A DNA stretch of 64,000 bases from Mytilus edulis (taxonomy: Eukaryota), in NCBI RefSeq assembly GCF_963676685.1, contig NC_092354.1, positions 77,500,001-77,564,000 of the forward strand. Reading direction: 5' to 3'. The notes beneath the pieces were generated by a model. It searched no databases. It saw nothing but the letters and a program-made list of their open reading frames with translations, and was not told the DNA's origin. The first letter of the stretch is position 1. Each line of letters begins with the position of its first letter. Both the position numbers and the translations under genes were made by a program. Below, one piece after another: positions 14,301-51,297 of this stretch.

Positions 14301-17300
14301 TGTCCAAAATCTTTCGTTAGATGAACCTGAAATTTGAGGCCAAAATCGGCCCTTACTGGACCTACTCCTTTGCATTATTGTACTTTCTTCAAAACCGCAA
14401 TTATTATAATAATTGCATGCAATAATTTCAAAATTTACAGCATCCCTTTTTTATGTATAAATTTAACATAAGGGAATTTTCTTGATCTAATCACTGCTAT
14501 TGCTATAATCACTGATATTGCTAATAGGAATAGCAGTGATACATTGTATTATAAACAATTAACTACATTTACCTTTAAAATCTTCCAATGCTCGATCATC
14601 CACTATCATTAATGGTCTCAAATCTCTCTTCTCTATCAGTTCTCGTGCTGCTGTCAGTGAGGTAAATATCTCACTTGGTTTGATGTCAAACCCTATACCA
14701 TTCAGTCTATTCAGTAAACATTTCTTTGATTCTTTGGTTGTATTTGTTACAAATTTGACATTCACATTCTGGCTTCTTAATCTGTAACAAAGAAACATTT
14801 TATGTTACTAATGGCGCTTTTTTAATATCACATCCTCATATCAACATGAGACAGATTTTATCCATTAGATCACCAGTGATGGTGATACAAGTGTCACCAA
14901 GAGCCAATGCACTTCGAGTTTAAGGGGGACTATCGAACATGCACAGCCCAAGGTACAGAGGGTCAGTCTTTCGCAAGACTTAAGCAATGGCAGGCAAAAC
15001 TATAAAGCAAGCAGCAAGTTGTAACAGTTTTATATAGTAACAGGTCCAAATAATAATAATGATGCCAAAACAATTTACAAACAAATAAAGTCCAAATGTT
15101 CCAAATAATAAAGTCACTAATTTCACTAATCCAATTCACAGTTTAAAGTTAAAGTCCAAAATGTTCCAAATATTCTAAGTTGATGTTGTCTGGTTGAACG
15201 ATTACAGTTGTGTTGAGCTGTCTTTTGAGTACGGGTTTCTCCTGAGTAGCTGAGCCTGGTTGGCTTTTGAAGCACTCCTATCTGGATCACACCGACGAGA
15301 CTACACTGACGAATAACTGTTCGACTCCGATATTTAAGGCGAATCCTGAAAACTACTCATAAAATGACAGCCATTGCTAATTTTGATAATTGAGATAATT
15401 TGAGTATTAATAATATTGTTTACAATGTCCAAAGGTGAAATATGAATAATGTCAATTAGAGAGATACAAGTTAATTACATTTATAATCCTAATTAAAACA
15501 TAATATTGCTCAGATTAATTAATGACAATTGACAAGATACCAAAGTGTTGCTCAGAGCAATTATTAAGAAGCGACATGTTTCACAAAATTTACCTGAGTA
15601 ATTAAATTAAAAATTTGTCAAACAATTATTTCATAATTTCATATTTTCTAAAATAATATATTTTCTCAATAAAATTCATTTTAAAAACTTTTACCTAAAA
15701 GAACACCTATGACAAATTCCCCCCTTCTCCAATATGTTTGTCCTCAAACATGAGAAAATATACAAAAACAGTAAACGATAAACATAATAAATATATACAA
15801 TAATCATGAAGAATAAACTTATATACACAAGAAAATGCCGAGATAAAGATAACATATTTTTCAAGATAAGATGAAAAATTCAAGATTAGACAAAATTGCT
15901 AGATTAAGAAAATTGCCAGATAAGATATGAAAAGCAAGACTGATGAAAATGAAAAATAAGACAAGACATATACGCAAAGAAAAATTCTAGACTGAAAATT
16001 ACATAAAATTTTGGCTGTATGCTCCTTGTATAAGGTGGTCGGCCCTATACAAGTGCAGGGTGTGGAGTTGAATGACCAGTCCAACTCCAAAGGGTTTAAA
16101 TCATTGATCATAAATATCCTTTTTAAAACAAAATGTTACATAAAAATAAAACAAAACATACTAGCTAGTATTACAATAAAAATACAAGACACACTATATT
16201 TACAATACCGGTATCTATCTTTTTACAATTCTATAACTCCTTATTTGCCAATCTATGTGGCTATACTCTATAATATTCTCATTTATACCAATCTATGTGG
16301 TTATACTCTATAATATTTTCAGTTATACCAATCTATGTGGTTTTACTCTATAATCTATTCATTTCTTTGCCCATCTTTGTGGCTTTATAAAAATAGTAGC
16401 TACAATTCATTATTTCATTCTATAAAACACTATCATATTAAACAGTTGTACATGTACTATTCACAAATTTATCTTCTTCTCATACTTATTTCTATCTTGT
16501 ATTGTTGTTCTAACACATTTATAAAGTTATTTATTGACGCATTTGACAGACTATCAAATGTATCCCACTCTGGTGCAATGACTGGATTCCTGTATCCTGA
16601 TAAATATTCCGTTGTACCATCTATGTTGTATCGAATTTCGTGTATTTTTCCATCAGAGGCTATTTGAAAACTGCAGTCGCGTTGATTTTCCTTTCCTAAT
16701 CTTTTCTCCATAGCATATTGAATGTCTTGTTGTAAAAGAGCTTGTTTGAAACGTTCCTTATGATCTATTAAAACTTGTCGTGCGATATTTGGTGCTGAAG
16801 TCATTGATTCATATTTTGTAGTATTCCCAGATTTAATTAAAAAGTATGGTCGATTGTTAACAATTTTCACAGCCAATAACTGTTGATTTTCATCTTCTTG
16901 ATTTTGTTCATTTATGGTTTCAGTTTGTGTGCTTATATCAGCTTTGACTTTAGTTGAAATATATTGTACACTATTAACAGCTGGATCCGGTTTTGTGAAA
17001 AATTTATGTTTATTCTGCTGTAATGGACGTTTTCTTTTCTTTCCACTCATTGTACGTTGTGCATGAAATTCTCGTACTAATTTTTCTGGGACCTTGCATG
17101 GAAAATACCAATCTGTGTTTCTTGATTTATTAGTAAACTTAAGTTTATAATATAATGTACCATTACCTCTGACTGATGATAAAACTTGTTGAATCTCCTC
17201 TTCTTTGAATGCTTTACACTTATTGTTCTTACAATCCTGACACCATGGCTTGTTGTCTTTGACTGGTGCATTTACGGTTGAATCTCCTGAAGGGCCTACA

Positions 17301-20300
17301 GTTCTCTTATTTGTTTCACTATTTTGTGCTGGTTGTTGATTTTGTTGTTGTCTGTTGATTCTACCGACAGGAAGTTGTTGTTGGTTCTGAGCTGGCCTAT
17401 TGTTGTTAATTATAGGAATAGGTAGTTGTTGTCTATTGATTGCATTGTTAATTGGTGGTACAGGTTGTTGACGATTGTTCGGTAAAAGTTGATCATTATC
17501 ATTGATGTTGTCATCTTGTATTTCTTCTGGATTCAGTTCTTCGTTGTCATTTTGAAATTCATCTGGTAAATTAGTCGGTCTGTCTTTTGGATCATAATAT
17601 GGCTTCATTCGTTGAGCGTTTACCATTGACACAACCTCTTTGTTTGTTGCACAATTCCTAAGTTTGTAAGTATTATTGGGTCCAATGCGGGTAATATAAT
17701 AAGGTCCTGACCATTTTCTATGTAATTTTGGTGCTTTTCCAACAGGAACTTTGGTACAATAAAGCCAGACACGTTGAGCTGGTTGAAATTCAGGTTCTTT
17801 AGATTTTTTGTCATATTGTTGTTTATATCTTTCTTGAGCTTGCTTGATGTTCTTAGCAGCAATTTTTCTTGATGTTTCCAAATTTTGTAGAATTCTGCTT
17901 AGAAATATTTTATGATCTTGTGCCAAACGATCTTTTGGTATTAGTGCGGTGTCAATGGGTAATGTCATTTCTCGTCCATAAAGTAAAAAGAATGGTGAAT
18001 AATCAGTTGATTGAGTTGCTGGCGTAGCACGGTATGCCATTAAAATTCCAGGAAGAACATCATACCAATCATCTTGTTGATCTCTTGTATAGGCTCTTAA
18101 CGCTTGTAAAATTACAGAGTTCATTCTTTCGCATGCGCCATTTGTCTGTGGATGGTATGAGCTTGTAAGATGTCTTTTAATATTGAAGAGTTCAGAAAGA
18201 GCTTTAACTAAATTTGAAACAAAATTACGTCCGCGATCAGATAAAAGTGTTCTCGGAGCACCATAACGGGATATTATTTCTCTATATAAAACATTTGCAA
18301 CTTCACCTGCTTCTTCAGATCTTAACGGAAAAGCTTCACACCATTTTGAATAACTATCAACTACAAGTAGAACATGTTTGTATTTATCTTTGGTTGTTGG
18401 AAGGCCACTTAAAATATCCATATGCCATCGTCCGAAAATATCATTTGTTGGTTGTGGTTGTAAAGGTGGTGGTTTTGAATTGAAAGCGCGTTTGGACTGC
18501 TGGCACACTTCACACGTTTTTACATATTGATTAATGTCTTTATACATCGATGACCAAAAGTATTTGTTTCTGATTGCAGCATATGTTCGTTCAAATCCTT
18601 GATGTCCTCCTCCCAGAATGCAGTCATGATAGGCCTTGAGTATTGAATCACGGAGATTCCTTGGAACTGCAATCTGTTTGACAAGTCGTTCATCTTTAGG
18701 CACTTTCTTACAACGTTTTGAGTAGAAGTGTTTTAAAATTCCATCTTCTAACTCAAAGTTGAATGATTCGGCTACGACTGCCCTTGCAAGTTCTGGATTC
18801 TGTGGTACTTGTCCTGTCTGTTTGTATTTAATGATATGCACAAAGTCTCCACATGTCTCTTGTTCTTTGGCTAAATTGGTTAATTGAACATCATCGATTG
18901 TCGCGGTTTGTAAACTGGAAATAACTGCATCTTCATTTTCACCCTTATAAATAAATGTTACTTCAGTATAATCTTTCGGTATATCTATGGAGCCTAAATG
19001 GTCTGCAAGTTCACTAGAGTCATAAGAAGCACTATTGTTAATTTCTAAATGTTTTTGTCTGGATAAGCAGTCTGCTGGGTTTTTAGATCCTGCACGATGT
19101 TGAATTTTAAAATTATATCCTTGTAATAGCAAACTCCACCTACCAAGTCTTCCCTGACAATCTTTGACTTTCTGAAGGTATTTTACTGAAATATTGTCTG
19201 TATACACTGTGAACTCTTGATTTGCCAAATAATGTTTAAAATGTTGAACTCCTTCTACTAATGCTAAAGCTTCTTTGTCAGTAATATGCCACTTAAGTTC
19301 TGAACCCCTTAATTGTCTACCTCCATAAGCAATCACATGTTCTAATCCATTTTGAATCTGGCTTAAAATATATCCATTTGAAAAATCTGAAGAATCTGTT
19401 GCTAAAATGAAAGGTTTGTCTAAATGAGGAAACGATAAAATTGGAGCTGATGTCAAACGGTCTTTTAAATTTTGAAACGCTATATCACATTCTGAAGTCC
19501 ACTTGAATCTTTGATCTTTCTTTAAAAGCTGTGTTAATGGAGCTGCTATGTGGGCATAGTCCTTCACAAATTTCCTATAGTAGTTTGCCATTCCTAAAAA
19601 ACTTTTAACTTGCTTTGCAGTGGTTGGTCTTGAGAAGTCCTTAACTTTTTCTGTATTTTCAGGATTGACGCGGATGCCATCTTTTGATATAACATGTCCC
19701 AGATACTTGATTGTTCTTGTCGCGAATTTACATTTTTCAGGATTAAGTTTCAGGTTTGCTTCACGTAGGTTTGAAAACACTTGTTGAAGGTGATTAAGGT
19801 GGTCTTCAAAGTTCTTTGAGAAAATCAGAATGTCATCGATGTAAACCAATGCAATTTTGAAATTTAAATCCTTTAGCACTTTTGTCATTAAACATTGAAA
19901 AGTTAATGGAGAGTTCATCATACCAAAAGGAAGTCTATTAAATTCATATACACCTTTATGTGTAATGAATGCACTTTTATGCTTTGTTGTTTGGTCTAGC
20001 GGGACCTGCCAAAATCCTGACGTTAAATCGAGAGATGAAAATAGTTCTGGTTTTGAATCTGCTAAAGTGTCAAATATATCTGTCATAGTTGGAATCACCG
20101 CTGACATGGGTTCTGTTATACGGTTTAAAGCTCTATAATCTACACATACGCGTATACTTCCATTTCTTTTCTTAACAAGTACGACTGGACTATGCCATGG
20201 TGAGGTAGATTCCTCAATAATATTATTTCTTTCCATTTCATCAAGTTGTTTGTCTAGTTCTTTGCGCATTTGTGGAGATTGTCTATATGGAGCAGCACTT

Positions 20301-23300
20301 ATTGGTTTTGCATCACCAGTATAAATTGTGTGGTAATGCAAGTTGGTATGTCCCAGTTCACTTAAATCCTTTGCAAATATGTCCCTATTTTGAATTAGAA
20401 AATTTTGAATTTGTTGCTTTTGTTCCACTGAAAGTTCTAAATTGTCTAAATTAAATCCTAGTTCTGAAAGTTCACTACAAAGTTGATTACCAGTTGTTTC
20501 ACTAAGAGAGTTTATAGGAGCAGATGATCCTTCTGTGAACTTTGTAACACGGTTCGACTGTATAGTTTCGGCTTTCGCAATTTTAGTCCTCCTGGGAATG
20601 TAAACGGTTGAATTTGTAGGATTCATAAGTCTGTATGAAGCTATGCCTCTTAACACTGTAGAAATTGTCTTCCCTCCTGCTACTTGATGTTCAATGGATA
20701 AGTTTCCTTTAGGTTCTAAAATTACTGTTGTTCCATGTTTAAACTTTCCAACATGTACTGGAATTATGATTTCAGATTGCGGTTGTATTTCGACTAAATC
20801 CACTGTGGTTGCCATGGCAATCTGAACGTTGTCATCTATGAATGTTGGAACAGTAACTGTAGACACCATGTTCTCCTTTCCTTTCAGTGTAGCACTATCT
20901 TTTACTGTTACATTAGGCACAGATATTGTCATTTTTCCAAAATCCAAATTAACCTTATGAGTTACCAAGAAGTCCAAACCAAGAAGTATTTTTGAATGAA
21001 GCGTTTCAAAAATGTGAAAGTTTTGTAAAATTTTGTGTTCGCCGAATCTAATTTCCAAAATAGTTTTACCTAGCACTGGGTGTACTTCTCCGCATACTCC
21101 AACTCCACTAAAAATTGATGATCTCTGTATGTCAGCTTGTGGCTTTAGTTGTCTTAAAAGATGTTGACTTATACAACTTATAGTGGCTCCACTATCAATT
21201 AAGCACTTTTGATTTGAATTTTCAATGTTCAGGTACATAAAGTTTCTTTCTAAAGATGATTTAAATTCTATATCTGCTTCTCTTGTTGTAACAGTTGAAA
21301 GACTTGCACATTTTGATCTTTTGCAGCACCATATATTCTTAGTTCTTTTCTTTCCCATGACTTCTACTAAAAGAATTTTGGCTATATTAGATAAAATCTA
21401 TTCACAAAATAAAGGCAATATGCTACAAAAAATGTGTGTAAAACTACAAAATTTCTTGAATTTATTAGTAGTCTCAATAAAATATATATTCACAACTTTT
21501 CTATGAAGAAACGTTTTACTTTAATAACTAGCAATTTAATTTCGAGAATTATCATGAATATTGTTATTTCAAAAGCTACTTATCTTTTAGTCTCTGTAGT
21601 AATTCTATTTTGTTCACACAGTGCAGTTGTCCTTCTTTACAATTACATGTAGCTTGCCAACTTTGGTATAGCAACTTCTAAAGTTGAAAACTGAAACTAA
21701 ACAAGATTATAATTAGACTTCTGTAAATGATAGACTATGAAAACAAAATTCATTTGAATACTACCAATGACTTTTACAGATTTAAAACTAATTATATTTT
21801 TAATCTAGTTAAATTCAATCTTGCACAATATTTGCTGAAACTATAAAAATTTTAATATAACTGTAAAGATAAAATAATAAATAATATTCCAATAAGTTAC
21901 TTAGCTTCAATAGTTGTTTCTCATTCTCTGCTGTTCCTTTAGTTGAATTTTATTTATGAAATTTCTTCACAAATTTTGTAAGTAGATAATTTAAAAGTAA
22001 TTTTGAAAGCTGTTGCTAATAATAATGCCATGCCAAAGCTAATTGGATCGAAATGATGCCAACGGGCCCGCCACCAAATCTGTCACCAAGAGCCAATGCA
22101 CTTCGAGTTTAAGGGGGACTATCGAACATGCACAGCCCAAGGTACAGAGGGTCAGTCTTTCGCAAGACTTAAGCAATGGCAGGCAAAACTATAAAGCAAG
22201 CAGCAAGTTGTAACAGTTTTATATAGTAACAGGTCCAAATAATAATAATGATGCCAAAACAATTTACAAACAAATAAAGTCCAAATGTTCCAAATAATAA
22301 AGTCACTAATTTCACTAATCCAATTCACAGTTTAAAGTTAAAGTCCAAAATGTTCCAAATATTCTAAGTTGATGTTGTCTGGTTGAACGATTACAGTTGT
22401 GTTGAGCTGTCTTTTGAGTACGGGTTTCTCCTGAGTAGCTGAGCCTGGTTGGCTTTTGAAGCACTCCTATCTGGATCACACCGACGAGACTACACTGACG
22501 AATAACTGTTCGACTCCGATATTTAAGGCGAATCCTGAAAACTACTCATAAAATGACAGCCATTGCTAATTTTGATAATTGAGATAATTTGAGTATTAAT
22601 AATATTGTTTACAATGTCCAAAGGTGAAATATGAATAATGTCAATTAGAGAGATACAAGTTAATTACATTTATAATCCTAATTAAAACATAATATTGCTC
22701 AGATTAATTAATGACAATTGACAAGATACCAAAGTGTTGCTCAGAGCAATTATTAAGAAGCGACATGTTTCACAAAATTTACCTGAGTAATTAAATTAAA
22801 AATTTGTCAAACAATTATTTCATAATTTCATATTTTCTAAAATAATATATTTTCTCAATAAAATTCATTTTAAAAACTTTTACCTAAAAGAACACCTATG
22901 ACACAAGGCTGAAATACATTCTGTATATATATAATTTGTCTTAATATCAGCCGAAAGCAAAAATGTTTAATCTGTAAATTTGCTGATGCAAATTTTTGTT
23001 CATGTCCCTGGCCATGCTGGCCGGGATTTGTTTCAACCTTCTTGAATATTTAATTTGACGACGCCTTCATTCTGTTTCTTAATTTAAAATTTTGTTGAAA
23101 CCATATTTAATCCAACTGATTTTGTCAAATTTCTCCAAAATCTCAGACTTTTATTGTGACCTATTTCCGCAAGGTGGATTTAGAGGGTTTTTCAAGCCCC
23201 TCCCCCCCCCTGTTTTGTGGGGAAAAAATTGGTTGATCATATAGGGAATAACTGAAGCAGGCCAGAATATTTCTGGAACCGCCACTGATTTCAGATGTAA

Positions 23301-29777: not shown

Positions 29778-32700
29778 TTATAACATGTCTGTTCTTCGTT
29801 TAAATGCATGGAAAAGATATTTACAAAGGTTACATATGTCTTTTACATTTTCTGTGCCCAACAACTGTATAAGTTTAAATGACGATGGACGCTTATAATA
29901 ATATGGCTTAATATACTGCCTCCTAATTTCATTATAACAATCACACTGTAAAATAAAATGAAACTCGTCTTCTATCGTATTTAAAGTACAGAGAGTGCAT
30001 TTTCTTTCTGATCTATTAACCCCGTGATATCGTCCTGTTTCAACAAATAAGTTATGTGAAGACAATCTTATTCTAGTTAGATACACTCTAAAATTCACAT
30101 GTTTAGTAAGGTAAAATTGTAAACAAACATTATTTACACAGTATTTATATAAAAAACACTTTGGCGAGCCATCCAATAATTGATTCAAATATTGATAAGC
30201 TTGATCAAATATTCTAGTTTTGACAAAATACTTAAGAGTGTCATTTACAACTAAATTATCTTGGTTATACCAGAAGTCATTCAGACCCAAATTAAACAAT
30301 AAATACTTCAGTTGATAAATCCAACTATTTCTGTTATTACATTGATTCCGTACCTGCTCTTTGTAACAATTTTCAAGAATACAATTAGTAGTTGATAAAA
30401 GTTTAAACCAGTATCTTATAATATTATACAATCTATAATATATCAAAGGATATCTACCAAGTTCATAATACACCATTACATTCGTTGTACATTGTTTGAC
30501 ACCTAAAATATTTTTGCAAAAATCTAACTGAACTTTTTCAATATTCGGAGCTTTATGAAAGCCCCATATCTCACTGCCATAGCATAAAATACTACTTATA
30601 TATGTATCAAACAAATTAAGGTACGTGAAAACATTCAAATATAAGGATGACACTTTTGATTTCAAGGCAAATACAGCTTTCCTGCCTTGCTCAGCTAATT
30701 GTTTTTGAGTTTTCAAAAATTTCCGTTATAATTCAACAGAATACCTAAATAACAAAATTCATCAACAATGTCAATAACACTACCATCAAAATACCACTTT
30801 TCTTCAACCCTCACATTACCACCATTTCTAAATACCATAATTTTTGTTTTAGCATTGTTCACAGTTAAACCCCATTTTTGAGTGTACAATAAAAGTGTGT
30901 CCAACATATCTTGTAAACCTTTTACAGAATCAGAAAAAAGTATCATATCATCGGCATACATAAGCAAAAATAGAGACAGTTCTTGTACTTCATACGGTAC
31001 ATTATCGTTATTTAAAAATTCCATTTCAAAATCGTTCACGTACAATGAAAAAAGGATTGGAGAGAGTACTTCCCCTTGCATTAAGCCAACTGTACTCGTG
31101 AACTGCTCTGAATAAAAACCATCAATTCGTACACATGATTTTACATTTGAATACATTGATTTTAGTAATGATAAAAGTTTCCCTGTTATACCAATTTTTG
31201 ACAATTTCAACCATAAATTCAGTCTACATATTGTATCAAACGCCTGTTTGTAGTCTACAAAACAGCAATACAAACGATTCTTACTGGAGAGTGTTTTTTG
31301 AATGACAGTTAATAAACTAAACATCGCATCAACTGTACTGCTGCCCGGACGAAATCCAAACTGTGCATCAGTTATAATGTCATAGGTATCGGACCAAAGT
31401 AATAATCTCATATTCATAATGGAAGTGAACAATTTGGCCAAATTACTAACCAAACTTATGCCGCGATAGTTTACAGGATCAGACGGATCGCCTTTTTTAA
31501 AAACTGGAACAAGTATCGCAACTGTCCATGTTGTCGGAAAGTAACCAGAAGACAATACCCTGTTGAACATTTCCTCTAAGAACGGAATCAGCACATCCTT
31601 ATATTCAATTAACATTTCGTTCAGAATTCCGTCAATTCCATGACTTTTCCCACGTTTCAATTTGGAAATACATTTCAAAATTTCGTCCTGCGTGATAACA
31701 CGGTCAAGTTCTTCGTATGTAGTGTCTTGTATACTCTGTGTGTCATTGACTATTGGAGTGTTACTTGATGATATCTCTTTAAAATGTTCAAAAAATGACG
31801 AAAGAGGCACTTCTGTATTCTTAGCGCGCTTCTTTTGGAACATTCTATAAAACTTTTTAGGGTCGCTTTTACGTAGATGCTCAAGCATGTCCCCTTCTTG
31901 ATGTTTATACTGCCGTTTTAACTTATTTTCGAACACTTTGTATTGTCTCTTCGTAGAGATAAGTCTCTGATGATTTTCTGCTATTTTGTTCTTATTAAAT
32001 ATATTTAACGCACTTAAATAAACATGACGAAGACTTCTACACTCACAATTGAACCATGGCTTATCAGTAGTTTTACATACAAATTTTCGGCTCGTACGTT
32101 GACAGTCAATAGATTTATTACTGGTACTTCTAAAAAATGGAGCAACAATATCCGTTAACCGAGTAGTAAAAGTTTCAATATAATTGTCAATACCATCTTG
32201 CGATTTTTTAGCATCACAAAAAGCTATTTGGCTGAGTAACCCACTATTCAAAATTAAGGATTCGTAACACTGTTCTTTTAAGTCATCGTTCCACCGAAAA
32301 CTGTCAAATGTACTTGAAGATACATTAAGGTTTTGTTGTTCATGTGTATAAGACAGCGCTTTGCATTGTAGACGAATGTGGAGAGGCGCATGATCACTGA
32401 ACGAAGTAAAGTTACTAACTATAAACTGTTCAACAATGTGAAAATAGTCAAACGGTACTATCAGGTAATCAACGACACTCATACCCCGCGAACCACAAAA
32501 AGTAAAATCGTTTGCCGTTCCGTCTTTGTGTCGACCATTCACAATTCGAAGTCCAGTACTTCTACACAAATTTAACAGTTTTGTTCCGTACTCATTAGTA
32601 CCTTGATCAGGGTTCCTTCGAACAGGTAGATTATTGTCACTCATGTAGTTAAAAATGTGATTGAAATCGTCAAAAATTGATCCATACAAACTATCATGTT

Positions 32701-33187
32701 TAATAAAATCATTACCTATTGCAGTTCTAGCATTCATATCACCTAATAAAAATACCTTAGAAGACTCAGTTGAATATTTTTCAACATAATTAATCAGTTC
32801 ATAAAATATATCACATTCATACATTTTATAATAATTTGAGCTAATTGGTGGTAAATAGACACAACCAACATAATAATCTTGACCACAAATTGTCACATCT
32901 TTTGATACTTGTAACCATATAATTGTATCATGGAGAACTTTAACAACTTTCATAAAGTTAGAAAAACAGTTTTTAATCATGTGAAAAATACCTCCTCCCT
33001 GTTTATATTTACTTTTTAATAAAGGAACGGCTTTACATGTAAAACCATCTATAACATTTTCATATGCATTATCAATCCAACACTCAGATAAAATAATTAC
33101 ATCATAAGAAGAAATATAATTTAAAAAGTTAGGCTCAGACAGTTTGTCATGTAGACCCCCATTAATGTTCCAATACAGAAATGACAA
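29778..33187 (-). pseudogene. LINE ORF2 (AP endonuclease-reverse transcriptase-zinc knuckle) with one -1 frameshift
   Basis: EN: WNING, ILSECW, LGDMNAR, VVDY, SDHAPL. RT: NYRGISL, VDYKQAFD, GLMQGEVLSP, YADD. After the frameshift at about 30715: YGSEIWG, ELGRYP, RLSSHNL..ETGRY, CTLC..EDEFHFILQC. Confidence 0.9.
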
Positions 33188-33197
33188 TGATGAAATC

Positions 33198-34446
33198 CTA
33201 ATCAGATTCAGTATGCATATCGGCTAATATTTCAAACCGGGACCCATTTTGAGAACTAGAACTAGCTTTCGGACTACTAATCTTGGAAGGAATTCTGGAC
33301 TTGGTTGCCTTCTTCTTGATTGCCTTCTTCTTGGTATCTAAATATCCTGGAGCTGACTGAGCACCTGTTGTCGAATTATCTGACTTTGAGTGTTTTTTGT
33401 AGACCTACTCGATTTCATATGACTGTTTATGCGTATGGTTTGGTTTATTTGTTCATCTGTATTCACAATTAAATTCCCATCTATATACAATTTATCCCTT
33501 GTAAGAAATGCTGATTTTCCTTTAAGTTTTGCTTTTTTATACATTGGAATCAAAGTTTTACGCTTTTCATGCACAGACTTGGGAAAATGTTCTGAGATTG
33601 AAATGTTTGTATCCTTTAACTTAGGAGAATTTTTTCGTACGTTATCTCTCTGTTGACGTAGCATGAATTTAGCAACGATTGGTCGTGACTTGGTAGTTTG
33701 AGTGTTATCAGAATTTGTTTTACCAATACCTTTTTTCCCATCCTATAAGCAGCAGAAATTTCAACTGGTTCAGAAATAGACAAACTTGTTGAACAAATAT
33801 TTTTAATAATATCAACACATTCTTCACCTTCCCCCTCCTCAACACCAAAAAACAGTAAATTGTCCCTTAAATTTTCACAACGAAGGGTTTCAAGTTGGTC
33901 TGAAATTTCCTTGTTTATAGATCTAAGCTCGACCATTTCAGTAGCAATACTTTCAACATCGGATTTATTTTTCTCAAAACTCTGAGAAATAAATTGCTGA
34001 CTTCCCTCCATGTCACCCACACGCCGAACGAGACAGTCGACATCAGATTTCATTTGCGACAATTTGGAGTCAATGCTATTCACAGAAGATTTTATATCAT
34101 CTACCGAGTTCATTTTTGTGCCTAGGTCGTCTACCTTTTTAATAAGGTCGGTCATCCACGGTGGCGGGCTTGAATATGAATATGACGACGGAGGAGGGGG
34201 GAACATGTTTATACCAGGTGATGTAGACTGCTGAAATTGATAATGGTGAGGTTGCTGTGATACCACACTGAATGGGTTAGGGATTTGCGAAGGTAATGTT
34301 GCTGAAAAATTACACGACCCAGAATTTGAACTTGTTGTTTGGGACATACTCAAAATGACGGACGAATCCAACGCACCTTTGGAACTTTTACTTTGTACTC
34401 GTTTCCTTTTTGCTGGAGGTTTAGTTGGTCTAGTTTTTTGTTCCAT
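33198..34446 (-). pseudogene. LINE ORF1, interrupted by two -1 frameshifts in A-runs
   Basis: ORFs 33616-34446 and 33338-33664 join at atgGGAAAAAAG (about 33735). A second shift at acAAAAAAC (about 33395) restores a C-terminus ...NGSRFEILADMHTESD*. Confidence 0.75.
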
Positions 34447-36477: not shown

Positions 36478-38004
36478 TACTGAGTGCCATTGAAAACGCA
36501 ACACTTGTAAATTTCAAATATTTTAAAATATATAATTAATTTTTTTTAAATGATTACCTATATCGGTTAGAAAATGAATCGTCAGACTTCTTTCGACAAC
36601 TTTACGCTTGAATGATTTTAGAAAAAAGTTACGTGCTTGGTTACAAAAAAGGGGGATGAGTCGAGTGCACCGCTATTTAACGCACGAGTGATTTTCTCAT
36701 TGTGTGTTTTGGAAAGCCTCGCTTAAGAATTGAACTTTCCCATCCTTTTTTGTTAGCCACTGCAATAAACTAAGCCGTAGATGCCAAGACTTTTAGACAA
36801 CCAGAGACATGAAGTTTGGGGCATGGTGCAAGGAGGCATTTCAAGTCGTGAAATTGCACGCAGAATGCATTGTTCAGCCTCAACAATTACCAGACTTATC
36901 CAAAGATTCAACCAAACTGGGTCTTTGAATGATAGACCACGTCCCGGCAGACAGAGAGCAACTACTGCCCAACAGGACCGATACATTCGTCTTCAGCATC
37001 TGCGAGATCGGTTCCGTACGGCTGTCCAAACACAACGGGAGACTGTCGGCGTCCATAGGAGACAAATTGGAGCAAACACGGTAAGACGCCGTTTGCGCAG
37101 CAGTGGATTGAGGGCACGGAGGCCTTTCCGTTGTCACATGCTGACAGCAGTACGACGCCAAAATCGCTTAAGATGGACACAACAGCGTCAGAGATGGTCA
37201 CACTGGCAATGGACAACTGTCTTATGGACGGACGAATCAAGATTTCATCTTCGCCGTAGTGATGGACGAACTCGTGTGTGGAGACGAAGAGGAGAACGCT
37301 ATGCAAATTCGTGTATCCAAGAGACAGATCGTTGGGGTGGTGGTAGTGTCATGGTATGGGGAGGAATATCATTCAACCATAAAACTCCTCTCATCACTAT
37401 CAATGGCAATTTAAACGCTCAACGCTACATTGATGAAGTTTTACGACCGACCGTTATACCGTTTATGGCTGGACATCAAGATGTTAATCTTTTTCAGCAA
37501 GATAACGCTCGTGCACACTCAGCACGACTCACAGCTGCGTTTATCAACAACAACCATGTTCAGACATTACCATGGCCAGCCTTTTCGCCGGATTTGAGTC
37601 CAATTGAACACTTATGGGATCAAATTGGACAAGCCGTAAGACGACGACAGCCACCACAAGTTACGCTGCGTCAACTCGAAATTGCATTGCGAGAAGAATG
37701 GACAAACATTCCACAACATCGTATCCGACGTCTGGTCAGGTCAATGCCATGCACGTCGTTGTAGAGCTTGTGTTGCAGCACGCGGTGGACACATTCGTTA
37801 TTGAGACTGTGAGTTAGAGAATTGTAGCGTTGTGTTGAATTCATGTATTGCATTCGAATCGTGGTAATTGAACATTTTTGGTTGACTTTTATCTTTAGAT
37901 AAACCCTTTAACTGTCTTTAACAATTACTGTACACAAAATATTATTTTTTATAAAAATGTTATTTCTAAAAAACTTAGTGTTGCGTTTTCATTGGCACTC
38001 AGTA
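36478..38004 (+). mobile_element. Tc1/mariner DNA transposon, full length
   Basis: ~28-bp TIRs TACTGAGTGCCAWTGAAAACGCAACACT (1 mismatch), TA TSD, internal transposase. Confidence 0.95.
36781..37764 (+). CDS. Tc1-family DD34E transposase, C-terminus truncated by a 4-bp insertion
   Basis: HTH, RPGR AT-hook-like motif, WTDES, MVWGGI, QQDNAR-(34 aa)-SPDLSPIEHLW. The native end RRCRACVAARGGHIRY* lies in another frame ending at 37804. Confidence 0.93.
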   Translation: MPRLLDNQRHEVWGMVQGGISSREIARRMHCSASTITRLIQRFNQTGSLNDRPRPGRQRATTAQQDRYIRLQHLRDRFRTAVQTQRETVGVHRRQIGANTVRRRLRSSGLRARRPFRCHMLTAVRRQNRLRWTQQRQRWSHWQWTTVLWTDESRFHLRRSDGRTRVWRRRGERYANSCIQETDRWGGGSVMVWGGISFNHKTPLITINGNLNAQRYIDEVLRPTVIPFMAGHQDVNLFQQDNARAHSARLTAAFINNNHVQTLPWPAFSPDLSPIEHLWDQIGQAVRRRQPPQVTLRQLEIALREEWTNIPQHRIRRLVRSMPCTSL

Positions 38005-43400: not shown

Positions 43401-46400
43401 TACGAGTCCGTAAATCTAGGGGCCCAATACAATCCCCTCTCCTCTGGATCAGGCTCGTAGGGATGATCAAAGTACAGGTGAGTTGCATGTGACATTATCA
43501 CCTACAAAATACAAAAATGTTGTCGTTGTTATACCCATGTTAGAAATAAAAAAAATTTAAGAGGGTCTAAATGCATATTCGCATTCATAAAATAACTGGG
43601 TAAGGTTTAAAGAATAGAGAATAATTGGCAAAATATGCAGAATAACGCGTCAACAATATTTTCGCAGACGTTAGGGACAAAAAAAATATATATATAATAT
43701 ATTAGAGAATAATAAGTTGGTGTCATTTAAGTGAAAGGTTTAACGCTATAAAACCAGGTTCAATCCACCATTTTCTACATTTAAAAATGCCTGTACCTAG
43801 CCAGGAATATGACAGTTGTTGCCCAATCGTTTGATGTGTTTTATCCACAGGCACTTGTCTCTGAAAAAAAATTTCCTATATACCTTATTATATAATAAGG
43901 TATATAGGGAAAAAAAATTCTGAGACAAGTGCCTGTGGTTTTATCCTTTGATTTTGCTATATGCTAATAGGGACTTTTCTGTTTTGAATTTTCCTCGGAG
44001 TTCAGTATTTTTGTGATTTTACTTTTTAAAGAACAGAAAATTTTGAGCAACAAGAATGTGTCCCTATTACACGGATGCCACATCCGCACTATCATTTTCT
44101 ATGTTCAGTAGACCATGAAAATGGGGGGGGGGGGGGGGGGGAATCTCTAATTTGGCATTAAAATTAATAGGATCATAAAAAATCTCGATTACAGAAAAAT
44201 GGTTCAAAAATATATGCAAAGAGAAAGACAATTTAGTGTGAATATAAACCAAAGTGGTTCAATTCTTCGAGATTTTCACTCGGGTAAAGAACTGTATCAA
44301 TATGGAAAAAGGAGGGAAACAAGATATACCTGCACAACAGTACCCTTATATCAAATTTAGGCAGTCTGGATCATAGTTTCTCAATAAGTTTCTAATAATT
44401 ATATGCACGAAGAATTAAGAACAATTATATGTAATAAATCATGTCAGTACCGAATCACTTAAACTTCTTGTGTTCTACAGAGTTTTAGAAATTTTATAAT
44501 ATCTTTCTGATTTACATTTGATGCAATGTTTCAATGAGCTATTATGGCTTTTGACGGAACATCGGACAGCGCTTTCGAAGAAGACATTTATAGTACTTAT
44601 AATGGATATAGGAAGATGTGGAATGGATGCCAATGAGACAACTCTCCATCTAACTCACAATTTATAAATGTAAACCATTATATGGTACTATACGGTCTTA
44701 AACACGGAGCCTAGGCTCACACCAGTCAGCAAGCTATAAAGGGCCTCAAACATTACTAGTGTAAAACCATCCGACTGGGAAAACGAACGGTCTAATCTAA
44801 ATAAAAAACGACGAAAACCTGCAAACGGTAAACACTTATGAACCACATAAACAAACATCAGATTCCTGACTAAGGATAAGTATACGTTACCTTGTAACCA
44901 GCGTTGGCATAGTTATACGCACGTCTGGCTTCTCCCCATTCCCAAACATTATCCCAGGCATTACTGTAGATGTGTTGGTTCTGATACATGCTTATATCAA
45001 ACGGCATACCATCTCCCGCGTTGAACCCATCCTCCCAACCAGCCATGTTAAGTCCATGAGTAAAAGTAATATTAGCTACGCGTTTAGTGAAATAGTTCTT
45101 TAATTCGTTTCTGATTGATGCAGCGTCTCCGGAAAAATTCAAATTAAGTTGGTCGCATTTTGTTGAATTTACCCATGCAGTTTTTGCAACCTCGTCGCCT
45201 CCGAAATGATATATGTTCAACGGATGGCCAGCATCAGTATGCATGGCTTTTAACTCAGAAACTACTTTTTCAATAAAAACGTATGTTGATTCAATGCAAG
45301 GATTAACTGCATTGTCTTTAAAATATTGTACAGATAAGAATTTAGACTCATTATCTGGATCTATCAATCTGTACTTCTCCGCTTCCATGTTATTTGTATT
45401 GCTGAAGTTCCGGTAGCGTGCCTCCATAGCGATGATAGCTGCGCGTGCATGCCCTGGTGTGTCTATTTCTGGAATTACTTCAATATGGCGTTTTTTAGCA
45501 TAGCTTAAAATATCTTTGTATTCTTGAATGGAGTAAAAACCTGAACCGGATGTAGTAGTATCAGGACCAGAGCCTAATTGTGGTATCAAGCAAACATCTT
45601 CAGTGTTACTATGACATCGTTTAGAGCCAACCTGAAAAGACAGAGTAGATAGTAAGGGTATTGAAAGATATGATCTTAGGTACTCGTTGAGTGACTGAGA
45701 GTAAAGCGTAGACATGCTCAGTTCTTTAGAAAAAGTGATATTAGCTATTGAGGACTGATATAAGGGAAATGACTCACAAATTCTGAAAAAAAAAAACATC
45801 ATTATTCCATCATTTGTTTTTAAGTTTTATTTTATTTTCTACTTTCGTCACACATGTCACAGTTGTATATAAAAAGATGTGGTATGATTACCAATGAAAC
45901 AACTCTCCACAACAGACCGATATGATACAGAAATTAACAACTATAGGTCACCGTACGGCCTTCAACAATGAACAAAGCCCATACCGCAAAGTCAGCTATA
46001 AAAGTCCACGAAATCACAATTTAAAACAATTCAAACGAGAAAAATAACGGCATATTTTATATTTATTCATTTCTCTGTACAACCTCACATATTTTAGTTT
46101 TCAATTTCTTTTTATCTTGTCAAACAATACACTGATTTATTTCATTTTAGTTGCATAACTTTTATTTGTCCAACTTATAACAAGAGTGTCATTGAATCTG
46201 CGTAGTTATATCAGACATAATAAATAATTTCATTTTCACAAATAAGTCGGTTAAGTATGATATGGAGGTAGTATTATCAAATTCACATAATTCAAACAGT
46301 AGTGCACCTGAAAACCTGATCTGTAATGTTTGCTATAATATATACTGAGAAGACGAAATGTTGCTTAATAAGGGGATAATTTAGTCATTTGGCGAGAAGG

Positions 46401-49400: not shown

Positions 49401-51297
49401 TAGATTGTCATAGAAGCATATTTTTTAGACTAATAATGGTCTATATATAAGCAGTTACATTTATTTCATGTTTGACACGGTGCAAATTTTTAATTTGATT
49501 TGACTTTTACCAAAAGAAGCATTGTAGCAAAGAAGAAGAATAATTGTGGTTGTAGGCCAGAAACACGAATATAATTGAATTCAACAGAAAGGAAACAAAT
49601 ATCGGACTTTGGAAAAAGGGAGATACCTTTATGTTATTCTCCATACATAATATCTTTTACAAAAAAACAGTTCACAAGCTGTATATGCCCGCGCGATTTC
49701 GCGGGTGTGTTCTAGTATACATTTAACATTGGAAATGGTTCTATATTTGACTAACCTGAGTTAATTCTGGTAAACCATTAATTTCAATTCTCCAGCCTTC
49801 GTCGTCGGCCAGGTGGAGATGTAATTTGTTCAGTTTATACATTGCCATTGAGTCCATCAGTTTTTCGAGAACGTTCTTTGAAACAAAATTTCTTGCAACA
49901 TCAATAAACATCCCTCTGAATTCAAATCGAGGCTCATCTCGGATCTCAACCTGTGGTATACTGAGGCCATGTGACAAAAGACTAAGTAGAGATTGGACAC
50001 CATATAACACACCAGCATTTGTCTTTCCATATATGGTAACAGTTTTTGCTGATGGATTCACAGTTAAACTATATCCCTCCGCAGAAAGTATGGTGCTGTT
50101 TATAGACAAATATATATTGACTCCATTAGCCGAAGCTGTGGCACTGCTATCAAAGTTATATTTATCTGCAAAGTGATTTTGTAAAACATTATTTAGATAT
50201 TATGAAAGAAAATTATATCATTGTTATTCTAAATAATATTAACATACGTACGCCTTTGTTACGTTTTAATTACTGAAGATTTACAGAAACCACTTTTCAA
50301 GACAAATTGTCATTCGGAAAACATAACACAAAGACTTATATATGAATGTAGATACTTAACATTTCCATACGATTATCATGTTGAAGCATTGAAACATATT
50401 GTATCAGAGCATAATATGTTTTTTTTTCTTTTCATAAAACAATATTTCATTGCAAAATACCCCATACCTTACAGTGCATATTAATGGAAAACATTTTAAT
50501 TCAATTTAGTAAACTAAAAACTTTTAAAAAATAACTGATTTTATGACATCCCCTTTCCCTCCCCCGCTGAAGTTAAATGGTTGCTCCCTTACCTGTAAGA
50601 AATGCTGCTTCATTGTCAAGTCCACTGTGAACTATTGTCACCTTTCCAGTTATATTGAGCAGTTTAGATGTGTCAAGGTTAGTTATTTCTTTTGGAGTCG
50701 GTATGACCATTTTTATCTGGACATCAGTTTTTGTTGTTTTATAACGTTGATAACGTGACATTGGAGAATAAGGGTCATATTTATCTTCTTTCTTTCGCTT
50801 CCATTGTTTTGCGCTGGTAAACTCCCCAACAAATCCTTCCTTAGTACTATCGATAACACGTGCATTTAGTCCGTCTGCTGAGATGTACCAGTTTGGTGGA
50901 ATGTCTGTTTTAGACACAGCCCAATTAGCGGCATAAAATGTTATTTCTCTCGTTCCATTTTGAGGTAACTCTTTGAATCCGGTTGTAGGTGTCATTGAGT
51001 AGAGACAGCCGTTTTCGTGCATTACTTTGAGATTGACATTCGGAAGCGTATATCCTTCGGGCTTAGTATACAGACCATCTTTCGAAAGGATATGCTTAGA
51101 TTCTACAATGAAAAAACTAAAAAAATATATTTTCCAGTTGACACCTGTCAGAGACTTTGGTGCCTTATTGTTGAACGTCACTTTAAAGAGATGTCGACTT
51201 CCATCATCAAGGTTCTCCACCATGTCAACTTTAATGTCCAAACCGGAAGCGATCTGGTCTAAATCGGATTGAGTTGCTATCTGTGAATTTACATAAC
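40275..51297 (-). CDS. GH20 beta-N-acetylhexosaminidase of bacterial chitobiase architecture, probably GPI-anchored; first (signal-peptide) exon not located
   Basis: Exons 50593-51297, 49756-50165, 44891-45631, 43261-43501, 42655-42907, 41257-41385 and 40275-40410 join in phase (about 870 aa). Motifs: DEPRFEFRGMFIDVARNF, KLNKLHLHLADDEGWRIEI, IPEIDTPGHA, catalytic HFGGDE, LYFDHPYEPDPEERGLYWA, QGHLWSE, FPRLLALAERAW, YRVPPPG, FPGLSVEYSTD, SADGKRTSR, then a hydrophobic tail. Confidence 0.93.
41257..41385 (-). CDS. Hexosaminidase exon F (C-terminal Ig-like domain)
   Basis: LDGDEIKPNTAFPGLSVEYSTDSQTWKSGTIPYTGSPVYLRTK; TTGTAG / AA|GTAGGT. Confidence 0.85.
41401..41668 (+). mobile_element. Penelope-like 3'-tail fragment
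   Basis: Near-identical reverse complement of 7266-7535. Confidence 0.75.
41885..42700. repeat. Degenerate ~50-55-bp tandem array derived from the exon E / intron junction
   Basis: Recurrent (g)taagctacat.cct..cc..ggrraagga.ttctttactttattc units; the terminal unit is the true exon end plus donor. Confidence 0.7.
42655..42907 (-). CDS. Hexosaminidase exon E
   Basis: MQGHLWSETV...FPRLLALAERAWH...YRVPPPGG; TATTAG / AG|GTATGT. Confidence 0.92.
43261..43501 (-). CDS. Hexosaminidase exon D
   Basis: VIMSHATHLYFDHPYEPDPEERGLYWAPRF...ENIAG; TTGTAG / G|GTGTGT. Confidence 0.92.
43846..43937. mobile_element. 92-bp foldback MITE with an 8-bp TSD, nested in a SINE
   Basis: CACAGGCACTTGTCTC...GAGACAAGTGCCTGTG, near-palindromic through the centre ccttattatataataagg; TSD GTTTTATC at 43838-43845 and 43938-43945. 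Confidence 0.88.
44891..45631 (-). CDS. Hexosaminidase exon C (catalytic HFGGDE)
   Basis: VGSKRCH...IPEIDTPGHARAAI...HFGGDEV...GWEDG...ANAGYK; TTTCAG / AAG|GTAACG. Confidence 0.93.
46898..49715 (+). mobile_element. Non-autonomous Helitron copy 1 (composite)
   Basis: A|TCTATACT ... subterminal hairpin CCCGCG(CG)ATTTCGCGGG ... CTAG|T; homologous to 60325-61898 in inverted orientation. Confidence 0.88.
47051..48110 (-). mobile_element. HINE with ~130-bp tandem repeats nested in Helitron copy 1
   Basis: Absent from Helitron copy 2 (empty site gggag|aaaaacgac). Terminal hairpin TGTCGAGCCTGCAAC...GTTGCAGAAAGCTCGACA, GCC microsatellite, repeats of aaccatgaaaatgaggtcaaggtca...gacatgtacacc. Confidence 0.8.
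49756..50165 (-). CDS. Hexosaminidase exon B (GH20b and start of the catalytic barrel)
   Basis: ...AEGYSLTV...AGVLYGVQSLLSL...DEPRFEFRG...LPELTQ; TTGCAG / CAG|GTTAGT. Confidence 0.92.
50593..51297 (-). CDS. Hexosaminidase exon A (CHB_HEX-type N-terminal domain)
   Basis: GYVNSQIATQSDLDQIASGLDIKVD...WKIYF...NWAVSKTDIPPNWY...VIPTPKE; TTGCAG / G|GTAAGG. Confidence 0.88.

What the first reader, a model, noticed from the sequence alone, without database searches (positions are those of the whole stretch)
14892..22903. Young, structurally perfect Gypsy element with intact pol but no gag: a possible split (gag-in-trans) LTR retrotransposon
Seen: 823-bp LTRs with no visible difference, intact CAAG TSD, PBS-like site, PPT and an uninterrupted 1629-aa PR-RT-RH-IN ORF. 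The protease DSG motif is only about 55 aa after the ATG. The ~720 bp between PBS and ATG, and the ~750 bp after the stop, are AT-rich with no gag-sized or gag-like ORF. Known: Ty3/Gypsy transposition needs Gag capsid, and non-autonomous LTR elements usually lose pol rather than keep it intact. Inference: this gag-less form itself transposed recently and keeps pol under selection with its own start codon. It may be the Pol half of a two-component family whose partner shares the LTR/PBS and encodes only Gag, or a parasite of another family's capsid.
Basis: partly seen in the sequence, partly recalled or inferred. Interest (0 to 1): 0.82.

Follow-up and report, generated by a model that had tools for sequence, protein, structure and literature searches.

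The report
Gag-less mussel Gypsy retrotransposon lineage
This is a freshly inserted, intact mussel (Mytilus) Ty3/Gypsy retrotransposon that encodes only the enzyme polyprotein and no capsid (gag) gene, and the same gag-less layout is shared by a whole lineage of related bivalve elements, so it is not a one-off deletion and must get its capsid from somewhere else.

Summary
The element is 8,012 bp on the minus strand, with two identical 823-bp LTRs, a CAAG target-site duplication, a PBS and a PPT. It has one 1,629-aa ORF with the protease Asp at residue 55. The leader (722 bp) and trailer (754 bp) are AT-rich and full of stops.

Gag is absent from the whole unit. Pfam, tblastn with gag from relatives, and AlphaFold plus Foldseek found no capsid. 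The N-terminus is retropepsin plus a dUTPase-like barrel. The C-terminal 340 aa form three chromodomain-like modules.

This copy is not a one-off deletion:
- Sibling gene models in M. edulis, M. galloprovincialis and M. coruscus (92-98% identical) start at the same Met.
- Thirty-nine cluster representatives (42-65% identical) share this start, with invariant M1, C12 and C17, and sit in one well-supported clade.
- An independent metagenome locus (L002, 52% identical) has the same ORF-free stretch between PBS and pol.

Capsid supplied in trans is therefore the best reading. Whether it comes from a dedicated gag-only partner or from another family could not be tested. The closest known analogue is rice Tos17.

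The parts
14888..14891 (.). Target-site duplication CAAG (flank next to the 3' LTR of the element)
14892..15714 (-). 3' LTR, 823 bp, TG..CA, identical to the 5' LTR
15715..15730 (-). Polypurine tract GGAGAAGGGGGGAATT directly upstream of the 3' LTR
15731..16468 (-). Rest of the 754-bp 3' trailer (15715-16468, 28% GC, PPT included). No ORF with any family match. Contains 3 tandem copies of a 40-bp unit at 16248-16367.
16469..21358 (-). Single pol ORF, 1,629 aa plus stop, with its own ATG at 21358
21245..21358 (-). N-terminal basic peptide (aa 1-38) with a W-x-C-x4-C motif. M1, C12 and C17 are invariant and W10 nearly invariant in 31 clade sequences.
20915..21244 (-). Retropepsin protease (aa 39-148, Asp55)
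20564..20866 (-). dUTPase-like beta-barrel between PR and RT (aa 165-265)
   Evidence: Pfam dUTPase E=0.037; Foldseek dUTPases E about 5e-4
19688..20437 (-). Reverse transcriptase (aa 308-557; Pfam RVT_1 395-557)
19115..19501 (-). RNase H (aa 620-748)
17597..18667 (-). Integrase: H2C2 zinc domain (aa 898-957), catalytic core (976-1088) and a weak match to the Tf2-1-like SH3 domain (1197-1254)
17240..17575 (-). Q/N/P-rich linker that varies in length across the clade (aa 1262-1373)
   Evidence: pLDDT below 50
16472..17239 (-). Three chromodomain-like modules (aa 1374-1437, 1487-1553, 1563-1629), each three strands plus a helix, pLDDT above 90
21359..22058 (-). Rest of the 722-bp 5' leader (21359-22080, 26% GC, 5 upstream ATGs, 15-24 stops in each sense frame, PBS and spacer included). 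No gag.
22059..22076 (-). PBS-like site TGGTGGCGGGCCCGTTGG, 4 nt after the 5' LTR. The priming tRNA was not identified.
22081..22903 (-). 5' LTR, 823 bp
22904..22907 (.). Target-site duplication CAAG (flank next to the 5' LTR)

Best explanation
The element is an intact, very young copy of a Mytilus family. That family belongs to a diversified bivalve Ty3/Gypsy lineage whose LTR-bounded unit encodes only Pol. The Pol layout is: a short basic Cys-containing N-peptide, retropepsin, a dUTPase-like barrel, RT, RNase H, integrase, then three chromodomain-like modules.

Shown:
- Pol is translated from its own conserved AUG. It is not made as a Gag-Pol fusion, by frameshift or by readthrough, because no upstream ORF exists.
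- No gag lies anywhere between the LTRs.
- The same architecture occurs in sibling copies, in related families and in an independent locus from another organism.

Inferred:
- The genomic RNA still carries the cis signals (LTR, PBS, PPT, long leader). It is packaged and reverse-transcribed inside particles built from Gag supplied in trans by a separate element.
- The element contributes its own PR, RT and IN. The C-terminal chromodomain-like modules steer integration towards chromatin marks, as in chromoviruses.
- The source of Gag is not determined. It could be a dedicated gag-only partner or an autonomous family.
For: Structure of this copy.

No gag in this copy:
- Leader and trailer pieces have no Pfam match.
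- tblastn with the gag parts of six gag-bearing relatives hits gag/NC regions in about 15 other loci, which serves as a positive control. It hits nothing in the window, L002 or L003.
- The first 330 aa fold as retropepsin plus a dUTPase-like barrel.
- The last 340 aa fold as three chromodomain-like modules.
- No sizeable overlapping or antisense ORF exists.

Not a one-off deletion:
- M. edulis siblings P0123, P0131, P0133, P0121, P0132 and P0134 are 92-97% identical and start at the same Met. The longest of the 15 members listed (17 in the cluster) is 1,630 aa.
- M. galloprovincialis P0227 (98%) and M. coruscus P0228 (93%) have the same start.
- 39 cluster representatives have the PR Asp at residues 55-58 and an M..K..W.C....C start.
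- M1, C12 and C17 are invariant in 31 sequences.
- These sequences lie in a 46-row clade with support 100. Relatives with a gag-length N-terminus fall outside it.

Independent DNA evidence:
- L002 has an LTR-like end GTGACA, a TGGTGG... PBS, and about 790 nt with stops in all frames. A 1,677-aa pol follows, then at least 920 nt of ORF-free trailer.
- An in-frame stop lies 42, 21 and 18 nt upstream of the ATG in the window, L002 and L003.

Selection:
- Many intact ORFs of 1,600-1,880 aa occur per cluster.
- dN is 0.28 with saturated dS between L002 and L003.

Precedent:
- Tos17 and RN304 lack gag, keep pol, and Tos17 is active (PMC3977881).
Against: - No Gag donor has been identified, so the trans-complementation step is pure inference.
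- DNA covering the whole stretch from PBS to pol was available for only two loci, the window and L002. For the other families, gag-lessness rests on the conserved start, on ORF lengths and on short contig lengths (5.6-6.9 kb for ORFs of 4.8-5.3 kb). A separate upstream gag ORF in some of those families is not excluded.
- A lineage that stays dependent on foreign Gag across species and 42-65% protein identity would be unusual for a parasite.
- The tRNA matching the PBS was not identified.
- Identical LTRs could in principle come from gene conversion, though the intact TSD argues for a simple recent insertion.
Confidence: 0.62

Rival explanations
1. Dedicated two-component (bipartite) retrotransposon. 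A gag-only element with the same LTR, PBS and packaging leader co-exists in the genome. The two halves complement each other, as the segments of a multipartite virus do. It is a special case of Gag in trans.
For: - The pol-only layout is conserved across a diversified clade with many intact copies. Stable mutual dependence explains this more easily than opportunistic parasitism.
- Long ORF-free leaders are kept in both the window and L002 and could carry packaging signals.
- Gag-only LTR elements (TR-GAG) exist in plants (cited in PMC13570524).
Against: - No gag-only element was seen. There is none in the 64-kb window.
- No tool could search a Mytilus genome with the LTR.
Confidence: 0.25
2. 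One-off or family-private deletion derivative of a normal gag-pol Gypsy element, mobilised once by full-length siblings.
For: This is the default expectation for an LTR element without gag. Relatives with gag fused to pol exist at about 38-40% identity (P0073, P0075, P0084, P0104).
Against: - The same start codon and N-peptide occur in siblings from three Mytilus species and in 39 cluster representatives.
- L002, from another organism, is gag-less in the same way.
- No protein in the clade carries gag.
- The gag-bearing relatives fall outside the clade.
Confidence: 0.03
3. Gag-independent replication. The Pol polyprotein alone suffices. The basic W-x-C-x4-C N-peptide (and possibly the C-x2-C-x4-C stretch before the first chromodomain-like module) would act as a minimal nucleic-acid chaperone, and no capsid shell would be needed.
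For: - The N-peptide is strongly conserved (M1, C12 and C17 invariant).
- It sits where the NC zinc knuckle lies in gag-pol relatives.
- This would explain long-term persistence without a partner.
Against: - No LTR retrotransposon or retrovirus is known to reverse-transcribe without a capsid (established knowledge).
- The peptide is under 40 aa and is predicted with low confidence.
- The motif lacks the His of a CCHC knuckle.
Confidence: 0.07
4. Gag is present but missed. It could be a very divergent small protein, an intron-split gene in the AT-rich leader or trailer, or an antisense gene.
For: - Gag evolves fast and often escapes Pfam. L007's upstream ORFs also gave no Pfam hit.
- L002's leader has a consensus AGG|GTGAGT at the point where GC-rich sequence turns AT-rich.
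- Antisense ORFs of 84-93 aa overlap the pol start in all three loci.
Against: - The sense leader has 15-24 stops per frame, and its longest open stretch is 44 codons.
- Translations of the open stretches are hydrophobic and low in complexity.
- Leader and trailer share no sequence between lineages.
- The antisense ORFs differ in start and end. They are alike only where they mirror conserved pol codons.
- The window leader has no GTRAG donor.
Confidence: 0.03

Closest known systems
Tos17 and RN304 (Ty1/Copia, rice); also BARE-2 (barley)
   Same: These are LTR retrotransposons with intact LTRs, PBS and PPT and an intact pol ORF, but no gag. Tos17 is demonstrably active and is proposed to use the Gag of a related autonomous element, Lullaby (PMC3977881). 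BARE-2 is described as 'life without GAG' (cited there).
   Different: - They are Copia elements in plants, not Gypsy elements in animals.
- They are one or two low-copy families, not a diversified multi-species clade.
- Tos17's gag loss looks like a clean deletion within a gag-bearing group. Here the pol-only ORF has its own conserved N-terminal peptide across the clade.
- Here no candidate Gag donor is known.
TR-GAG elements (terminal-repeat retrotransposons with a GAG domain, plants)
   Same: They are the mirror-image half: LTR elements that keep only gag (cited in PMC13570524). They show that single-gene LTR elements can be maintained.
   Different: They encode gag, not pol. They have not been linked to a pol-only partner. 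None was found here.
Chromoviruses (chromodomain-bearing Ty3/Gypsy elements)
   Same: The domain order is PR-RT-RH-IN, followed by chromodomain-type modules after the integrase. More distant relatives carry Pfam Chromo PF00385.
   Different: - This element has three tandem chromodomain-like modules behind a long disordered linker, not one.
- This protein does not reach Pfam Chromo significance.
- Gag is absent.
- Phylogenetic placement among the named chromovirus clades was not tested.
Foamy viruses (Spumaretrovirinae): Pol expressed independently of Gag
   Same: Pol (PR-RT-RH-IN) starts at its own AUG and is not made as a Gag-Pol fusion. The foamy-virus part is established knowledge.
   Different: Foamy viruses still encode Gag on the same genome and make Pol from a spliced mRNA. 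Here there is no gag, and splicing is untested.
Mollusc Gypsy clades (C-clade/Mag lineage, MolGy1-14; PMC6238403) and Troyka (PMC12440569)
   Same: Same host phylum and same superfamily-level pol.
   Different: - Assignment to a named MolGy clade was not possible because no reference sequences were at hand.
- The passages of that paper found by a term search say nothing of gag-less structure.
- Troyka is excluded. It has 3-bp TSDs and CG..CG termini. This element has a 4-bp TSD and TG..CA termini.

Membership tests
Ty3/Gypsy (Metaviridae) LTR retrotransposon | Direct LTRs with TG..CA termini and a 4-6 bp target-site duplication | tested here: met
   823-bp identical LTRs, TG..CA, CAAG TSD
Ty3/Gypsy (Metaviridae) LTR retrotransposon | PBS next to the 5' LTR and PPT next to the 3' LTR | tested here: met
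   TGGTGGCGGGCCCGTTGG 4 nt after the LTR; GGAGAAGGGGGGAATT before the 3' LTR. The tRNA was not identified.
Ty3/Gypsy (Metaviridae) LTR retrotransposon | Pol domain order PR-RT-RH-IN | tested here: met
   Pfam domains in that order
Ty3/Gypsy (Metaviridae) LTR retrotransposon | Gag (capsid/nucleocapsid) encoded upstream of pol, as in an autonomous element | tested here: not met
   No ORF, family match, tblastn hit or capsid-like fold. It belongs to the superfamily by pol, but it is not an autonomous member.
Chromovirus | Chromodomain C-terminal to the integrase | tested here: met
   Three strand-strand-strand-helix modules with pLDDT above 90. Foldseek's listed hits are all chromodomain or chromo-shadow proteins. 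Per-domain TM is 0.7-0.79 and E is 0.013-0.1, none at or below 0.001. Pfam PF00385 is not significant in this protein.
Chromovirus | RT/IN phylogeny inside the chromovirus branch | not tested
Gag-less, pol-intact non-autonomous LTR retrotransposon (Tos17 type) | Complete cis elements and intact pol, no gag | tested here: met
Gag-less, pol-intact non-autonomous LTR retrotransposon (Tos17 type) | Evidence that the gag-less form itself transposes | tested here: met
   Identical LTRs and an intact TSD around a unit with no gag. Several gag-less sibling copies lie on different contigs.
Gag-less, pol-intact non-autonomous LTR retrotransposon (Tos17 type) | An autonomous or gag-encoding partner in the same genome with matching PBS and packaging signals | not testable with these tools
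The metagenome scans found no Mytilus DNA.
Troyka | 3-bp TSD and CG..CG termini | tested here: not met
   4-bp TSD and TG..CA termini, against the definition in PMC12440569
LARD / TRIM / TR-GAG non-autonomous elements | No pol coding capacity | tested here: not met
   Intact 1,629-aa pol

The most novel reading that the evidence does not exclude
A stable bipartite LTR retrotransposon. Pol-only elements (this lineage) and still unseen gag-only elements would share LTR, PBS and packaging signals and co-evolve as two obligately complementing genomes across bivalves. This would be a cellular counterpart of multipartite viruses.
Probability: 0.22. Interest if true: 0.88.

Novelty: new variant of a known kind. 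Interest (0 to 1): 0.62.

Why it matters
Textbook LTR retrotransposons carry their own capsid gene. The few known gag-less, pol-intact elements (Tos17, RN304, BARE-2) are isolated plant families, viewed as short-lived parasites of close relatives.

Here the gag-less, own-start pol layout is conserved across many bivalve families, each with many intact copies, and one copy is essentially brand new. If the lineage really lacks gag everywhere, there are two options. Division of labour between separate gag and pol elements could be evolutionarily stable. Alternatively, these elements replicate in an unexpected way.

It also matters in practice. Annotation pipelines that require gag to call an element 'intact' or 'autonomous' will misclassify an abundant and active bivalve TE group. 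The triple chromodomain tail also predicts targeted integration.

Tried and rejected
1. Gag hidden in the C-terminal 500 aa of the ORF. Rejected: the AlphaFold model shows three chromodomain-like modules behind a disordered linker, and all listed Foldseek hits are chromodomain or chromo-shadow proteins. phmmer against PDB found nothing.
2. Capsid between PR and RT or at the N-terminus. Rejected: the fold is retropepsin plus a dUTPase-like barrel.
3. Relic gag in the leader or trailer. Rejected: Pfam on all open stretches found nothing, and tblastn with relatives' gag found nothing, while other loci gave gag hits as a positive control.
4. Antisense ORFs over the pol start, seen in all three loci. 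Rejected: they only mirror conserved pol codons and have different ends.
5. Conserved leader or trailer RNA. None found by blastn between lineages. Rfam found nothing in the window.
6. Leader intron. L002 has a good donor at the GC-to-AT transition, but the window leader has no GTRAG donor. Left as an idea only.
The metagenome scan with the single protein found nothing. The viral-contig scan gave one unrelated locus at 27% identity. The genome-contig scan gave only a 5'-truncated, degraded copy, present as host contamination in a Sedimenticola MAG.
8. L007 as a Pfam positive control for gag. Its upstream ORFs gave no Pfam hit.
9. dN/dS. dS is saturated between the available DNA pairs, so only 'dN well below dS' can be stated.
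10. The bacterial promoter/terminator scan of the LTR is not meaningful for a eukaryote.
11. Literature searches turned up no description of a gag-less Gypsy lineage in bivalves.

Full report
**Observation**

The element occupies window 14892-22903 on the minus strand.
- Its two LTRs (14892-15714 and 22081-22903) are 823 bp long and identical at every base. The identity ends exactly at both borders.
- The LTRs begin with TG and end with CA, with a 5-bp terminal inverted repeat.
- The unit is flanked by the 4-bp duplication CAAG.
- On the element strand, TGGTGGCGGGCCCGTTGG lies 4 nt after the 5' LTR. This is a PBS-like site that starts with the complement of tRNA CCA.
- GGAGAAGGGGGGAATT abuts the 3' LTR.
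- One ORF (21358..16469, 1,629 aa) carries Pfam protease, RVT_1, RNase H, integrase zinc and integrase core domains in that order. The DSG Asp is residue 55.
- The 722-bp leader (26% GC) has 15-24 stop codons in each sense frame and no open stretch above 44 codons.
- The 754-bp trailer (28% GC) is similar.
- An in-frame stop lies 42 nt upstream of the ATG.
- The window holds no other copy or solo LTR, no N, no tRNA gene and no Rfam family.

**Is gag hidden somewhere?**

I looked in all the places it could be.
- *Leader and trailer.* All open stretches of 40 codons or more on the sense strand, plus the longest antisense ones, gave no family match even at E up to 10.
- *tblastn with relatives' gag.* I used the N-terminal gag parts of the six relatives that have a gag-length N-terminus (P0073, P0075, P0084, P0100, P0104, P0120), plus five relatives with shorter N-terminal extensions. 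This gave gag or zinc-knuckle hits in about 15 other fetched loci, so the method works. It gave none in the window, L002 or L003.
- *First 330 residues.* AlphaFold2 with a 31-sequence alignment gave mean pLDDT 74. The model is a retropepsin (Ddi1 RVP and EIAV or FIV proteases, E down to 2e-7) followed by a dUTPase-like barrel (E about 5e-4; Pfam dUTPase E=0.037).
- *Last 340 residues.* There is a disordered Q/N/P-rich linker, then three modules of three strands plus a helix with pLDDT above 90. All listed Foldseek hits are chromodomain or chromo-shadow proteins (HP1, CHD4 tandem chromodomains, cpSRP43, Rhino, CBX). Per-domain TM is 0.7-0.79. E-values are only 0.013-0.1 because the query has several domains.
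- *Overlapping ORFs.* Nothing inside pol exceeds 89 codons.
- *Antisense ORFs.* ORFs of 84-93 aa overlap the pol start in the window, L002 and L003. They are alike only where they mirror conserved pol codons, and they start and end at different places.

No capsid-like sequence or fold exists in the unit.

**Host and siblings**

The window also holds a LINE, a Tc1/mariner transposase and intron-split exons of a GH20 hexosaminidase-like gene, so it is an animal genome.

The best protein matches are from Mytilus:
- P0227 (M. galloprovincialis): 98% identity over the first 330 aa.
- P0123 and P0131 (M. edulis, 1,630 aa): 96-97%.
- P0228 (M. coruscus): 93%.

All sibling gene models that reach the N-terminus begin MGKKRIKNIWCC, the same Met as here. 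These are P0121, P0123, P0131, P0132, P0133, P0134, P0227 and P0228. The longest of the 15 members listed for the 90% cluster (17 members in all) is 1,630 aa, and none carries a gag domain.

The 3-8% protein divergence among several still-intact ORFs suggests that the divergence arose in replicating lineages rather than by decay after insertion. This is an inference.

**The lineage**
- The word search returned dozens of clusters of 1,500-1,880-aa proteins at 42-65% identity. They come from Mb-scale ENA assemblies, Logan contigs and JGI metagenomes. All have the same Pfam architecture and none has a gag family.
- In 39 representatives the protease Asp sits at residues 55-58 behind a conserved start of the form M..K..W.C....C.
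- In a 31-sequence alignment M1, C12 and C17 are invariant and W10 is nearly so.
- A FastTree tree of the RT-IN core (100 rows, local SH-like support only) places all of these in one 46-row clade with support 100. The other rows in that clade are N-terminally truncated gene models.
- The relatives with a gag-length N-terminus (P0073, P0075, P0084, P0104) branch outside that clade.
- Pinctada imbricata proteins (P0050) are close outgroups and also have a short N-terminus.
- In gag-pol relatives the CCHC knuckle lies 45-60 aa before the protease Asp. This is roughly where the clade's N-peptide sits. The peptide may therefore be a remnant of nucleocapsid, but this is only suggestive.

**Independent DNA evidence**

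The alignment-based metagenome scan gave two clade loci.
- *L002* (Ga0209567_10004060, 6,876 bp, 52% identity) starts inside an LTR-like end (...GTGTGACA). TGGTGGAGAATCCGGGTACC follows 3 nt later, the same layout as in the window.
- About 790 nt follow with 17-23 stops per frame. No ORF runs off the contig's 5' end.
- Next come a 1,677-aa pol with an in-frame stop 21 nt before its ATG, and at least 920 nt of ORF-free trailer.
- *L003* has only 303 nt upstream. That stretch is also closed in all frames.
- Contig lengths of 5.6-6.9 kb for several other clade ORFs leave little room for gag. This is circumstantial.
- Leaders and trailers share no sequence between lineages.
- Between L002 and L003, dN is 0.28 while synonymous sites are saturated. 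This fits purifying selection on pol.

**Interpretation**

No sibling or relative in the clade has gag upstream of pol, and no capsid homology is found.

The 'one-off deletion' reading is contradicted. The gag-less, own-start pol unit is ancestral to a diversified bivalve lineage and is still transposing.

LTR retroelements are known to reverse-transcribe inside Gag particles (established knowledge). The most likely mechanism is therefore packaging of this RNA by Gag made elsewhere, with the element supplying its own PR, RT and IN.

Published precedents:
- Rice Tos17 and its relative RN304 lack gag, keep pol, and Tos17 is active. It is proposed to use Lullaby's Gag (PMC3977881).
- BARE-2 is another case (cited there).
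- Gag-only TR-GAG elements are known in plants (cited in PMC13570524).

New here: the superfamily and host (Gypsy, animals), the spread of the layout across a whole lineage, the conserved independent pol start, and the triple chromodomain tail.

The Gag source was not testable with the tools at hand. It could be a dedicated partner with the same LTR, an unrelated autonomous family, or none.

**Limits**
- Full PBS-to-pol DNA exists for two loci only.
- The tree is FastTree with local supports, and several long branches meet outside the clade.
- The chromodomain call rests on a predicted structure with weak whole-model E-values.
- The PBS tRNA is unidentified.
- The named mollusc Gypsy clades (PMC6238403) could not be matched for lack of reference sequences.
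- My literature searches cover open-access text only. Repbase entries could already list such pol-only elements.

One bench step was referred.

Noticed in passing
window 16248-16367: Three tandem copies of a 40-bp unit (93% and 83% identical to the first) lie in the 3' trailer of the element. The longest antisense open stretches of the trailer run through them.
   Followed up: partly
window 20564-20866 (aa 165-265 of pol): A dUTPase-like beta-barrel sits between protease and RT (Pfam dUTPase E=0.037; Foldseek dUTPases E about 5e-4). It is conserved across the clade. I did not check whether the catalytic motifs are intact.
   Followed up: partly
window 21245-21358 (aa 1-38 of pol): A conserved basic N-terminal peptide carries W-x-C-x4-C (M1, C12 and C17 invariant in 31 sequences). 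It occupies the position of the NC zinc knuckle in gag-pol relatives. It may be a nucleocapsid remnant or a minimal nucleic-acid-binding peptide.
   Followed up: partly
L002 355-366: A consensus 5' splice site (AGG|GTGAGT) lies exactly where the leader switches from 50-60% GC to 22-31% GC. This suggests a leader intron before pol. The window leader has no GTRAG donor, but it has a pyrimidine-rich ...TTCTTTTAG just before the ATG.
   Followed up: partly
window 29778-34446 (-): A LINE-type non-LTR retrotransposon. It has an ORF1-like 276-aa coiled-coil ORF (33616-34446) and an endonuclease-RT ORF (30713-33187), continued by a 312-aa ORF (29778-30716).
   Followed up: no
window 36781-37764 (+): An intact-looking 327-aa Tc1/mariner-type transposase (HTH plus DDE_3) lies in the GC-richest 2-kb block of the window (41% GC).
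   Followed up: no
window 44870-45802 and 50573-51241 (-): Two large exon-like ORFs of a glycosyl hydrolase family 20 (hexosaminidase or chitobiase-like) gene: the catalytic domain and the CHB_HEX carbohydrate-binding domain. This is probably the host gene of the region.
   Followed up: no
window 56392-57909 (+): A 505-aa ORF with a partial RVT_1 match (E=1.9e-8). This is another retroelement fragment, unrelated to the Gypsy element.
   Followed up: no
cluster of P0001 (M. edulis gene models): Sibling copies are clustered. Four listed gene models lie on one 579-kb contig (accessions CAG2237143 to CAG2237157), three on a 3.5-Mb contig, and two each on two others. This fits chromodomain-guided or nested insertion.
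   Followed up: no
L082 (JBEVXT010000508.1, 'MAG: Sedimenticola sp.'): A degraded copy of a related bivalve-type Gypsy pol (48% identity) sits on a contig filed under a bacterial MAG. P0066 and P0120 are similar cases. This is most likely host DNA contaminating symbiont bins.
   Followed up: partly
L002 vs L003, last ~180 codons: The second and third chromodomain-like modules diverge much faster than the rest of pol: 22% identity and dN about 1.15, against 65% identity and dN 0.28 overall.
   Followed up: no
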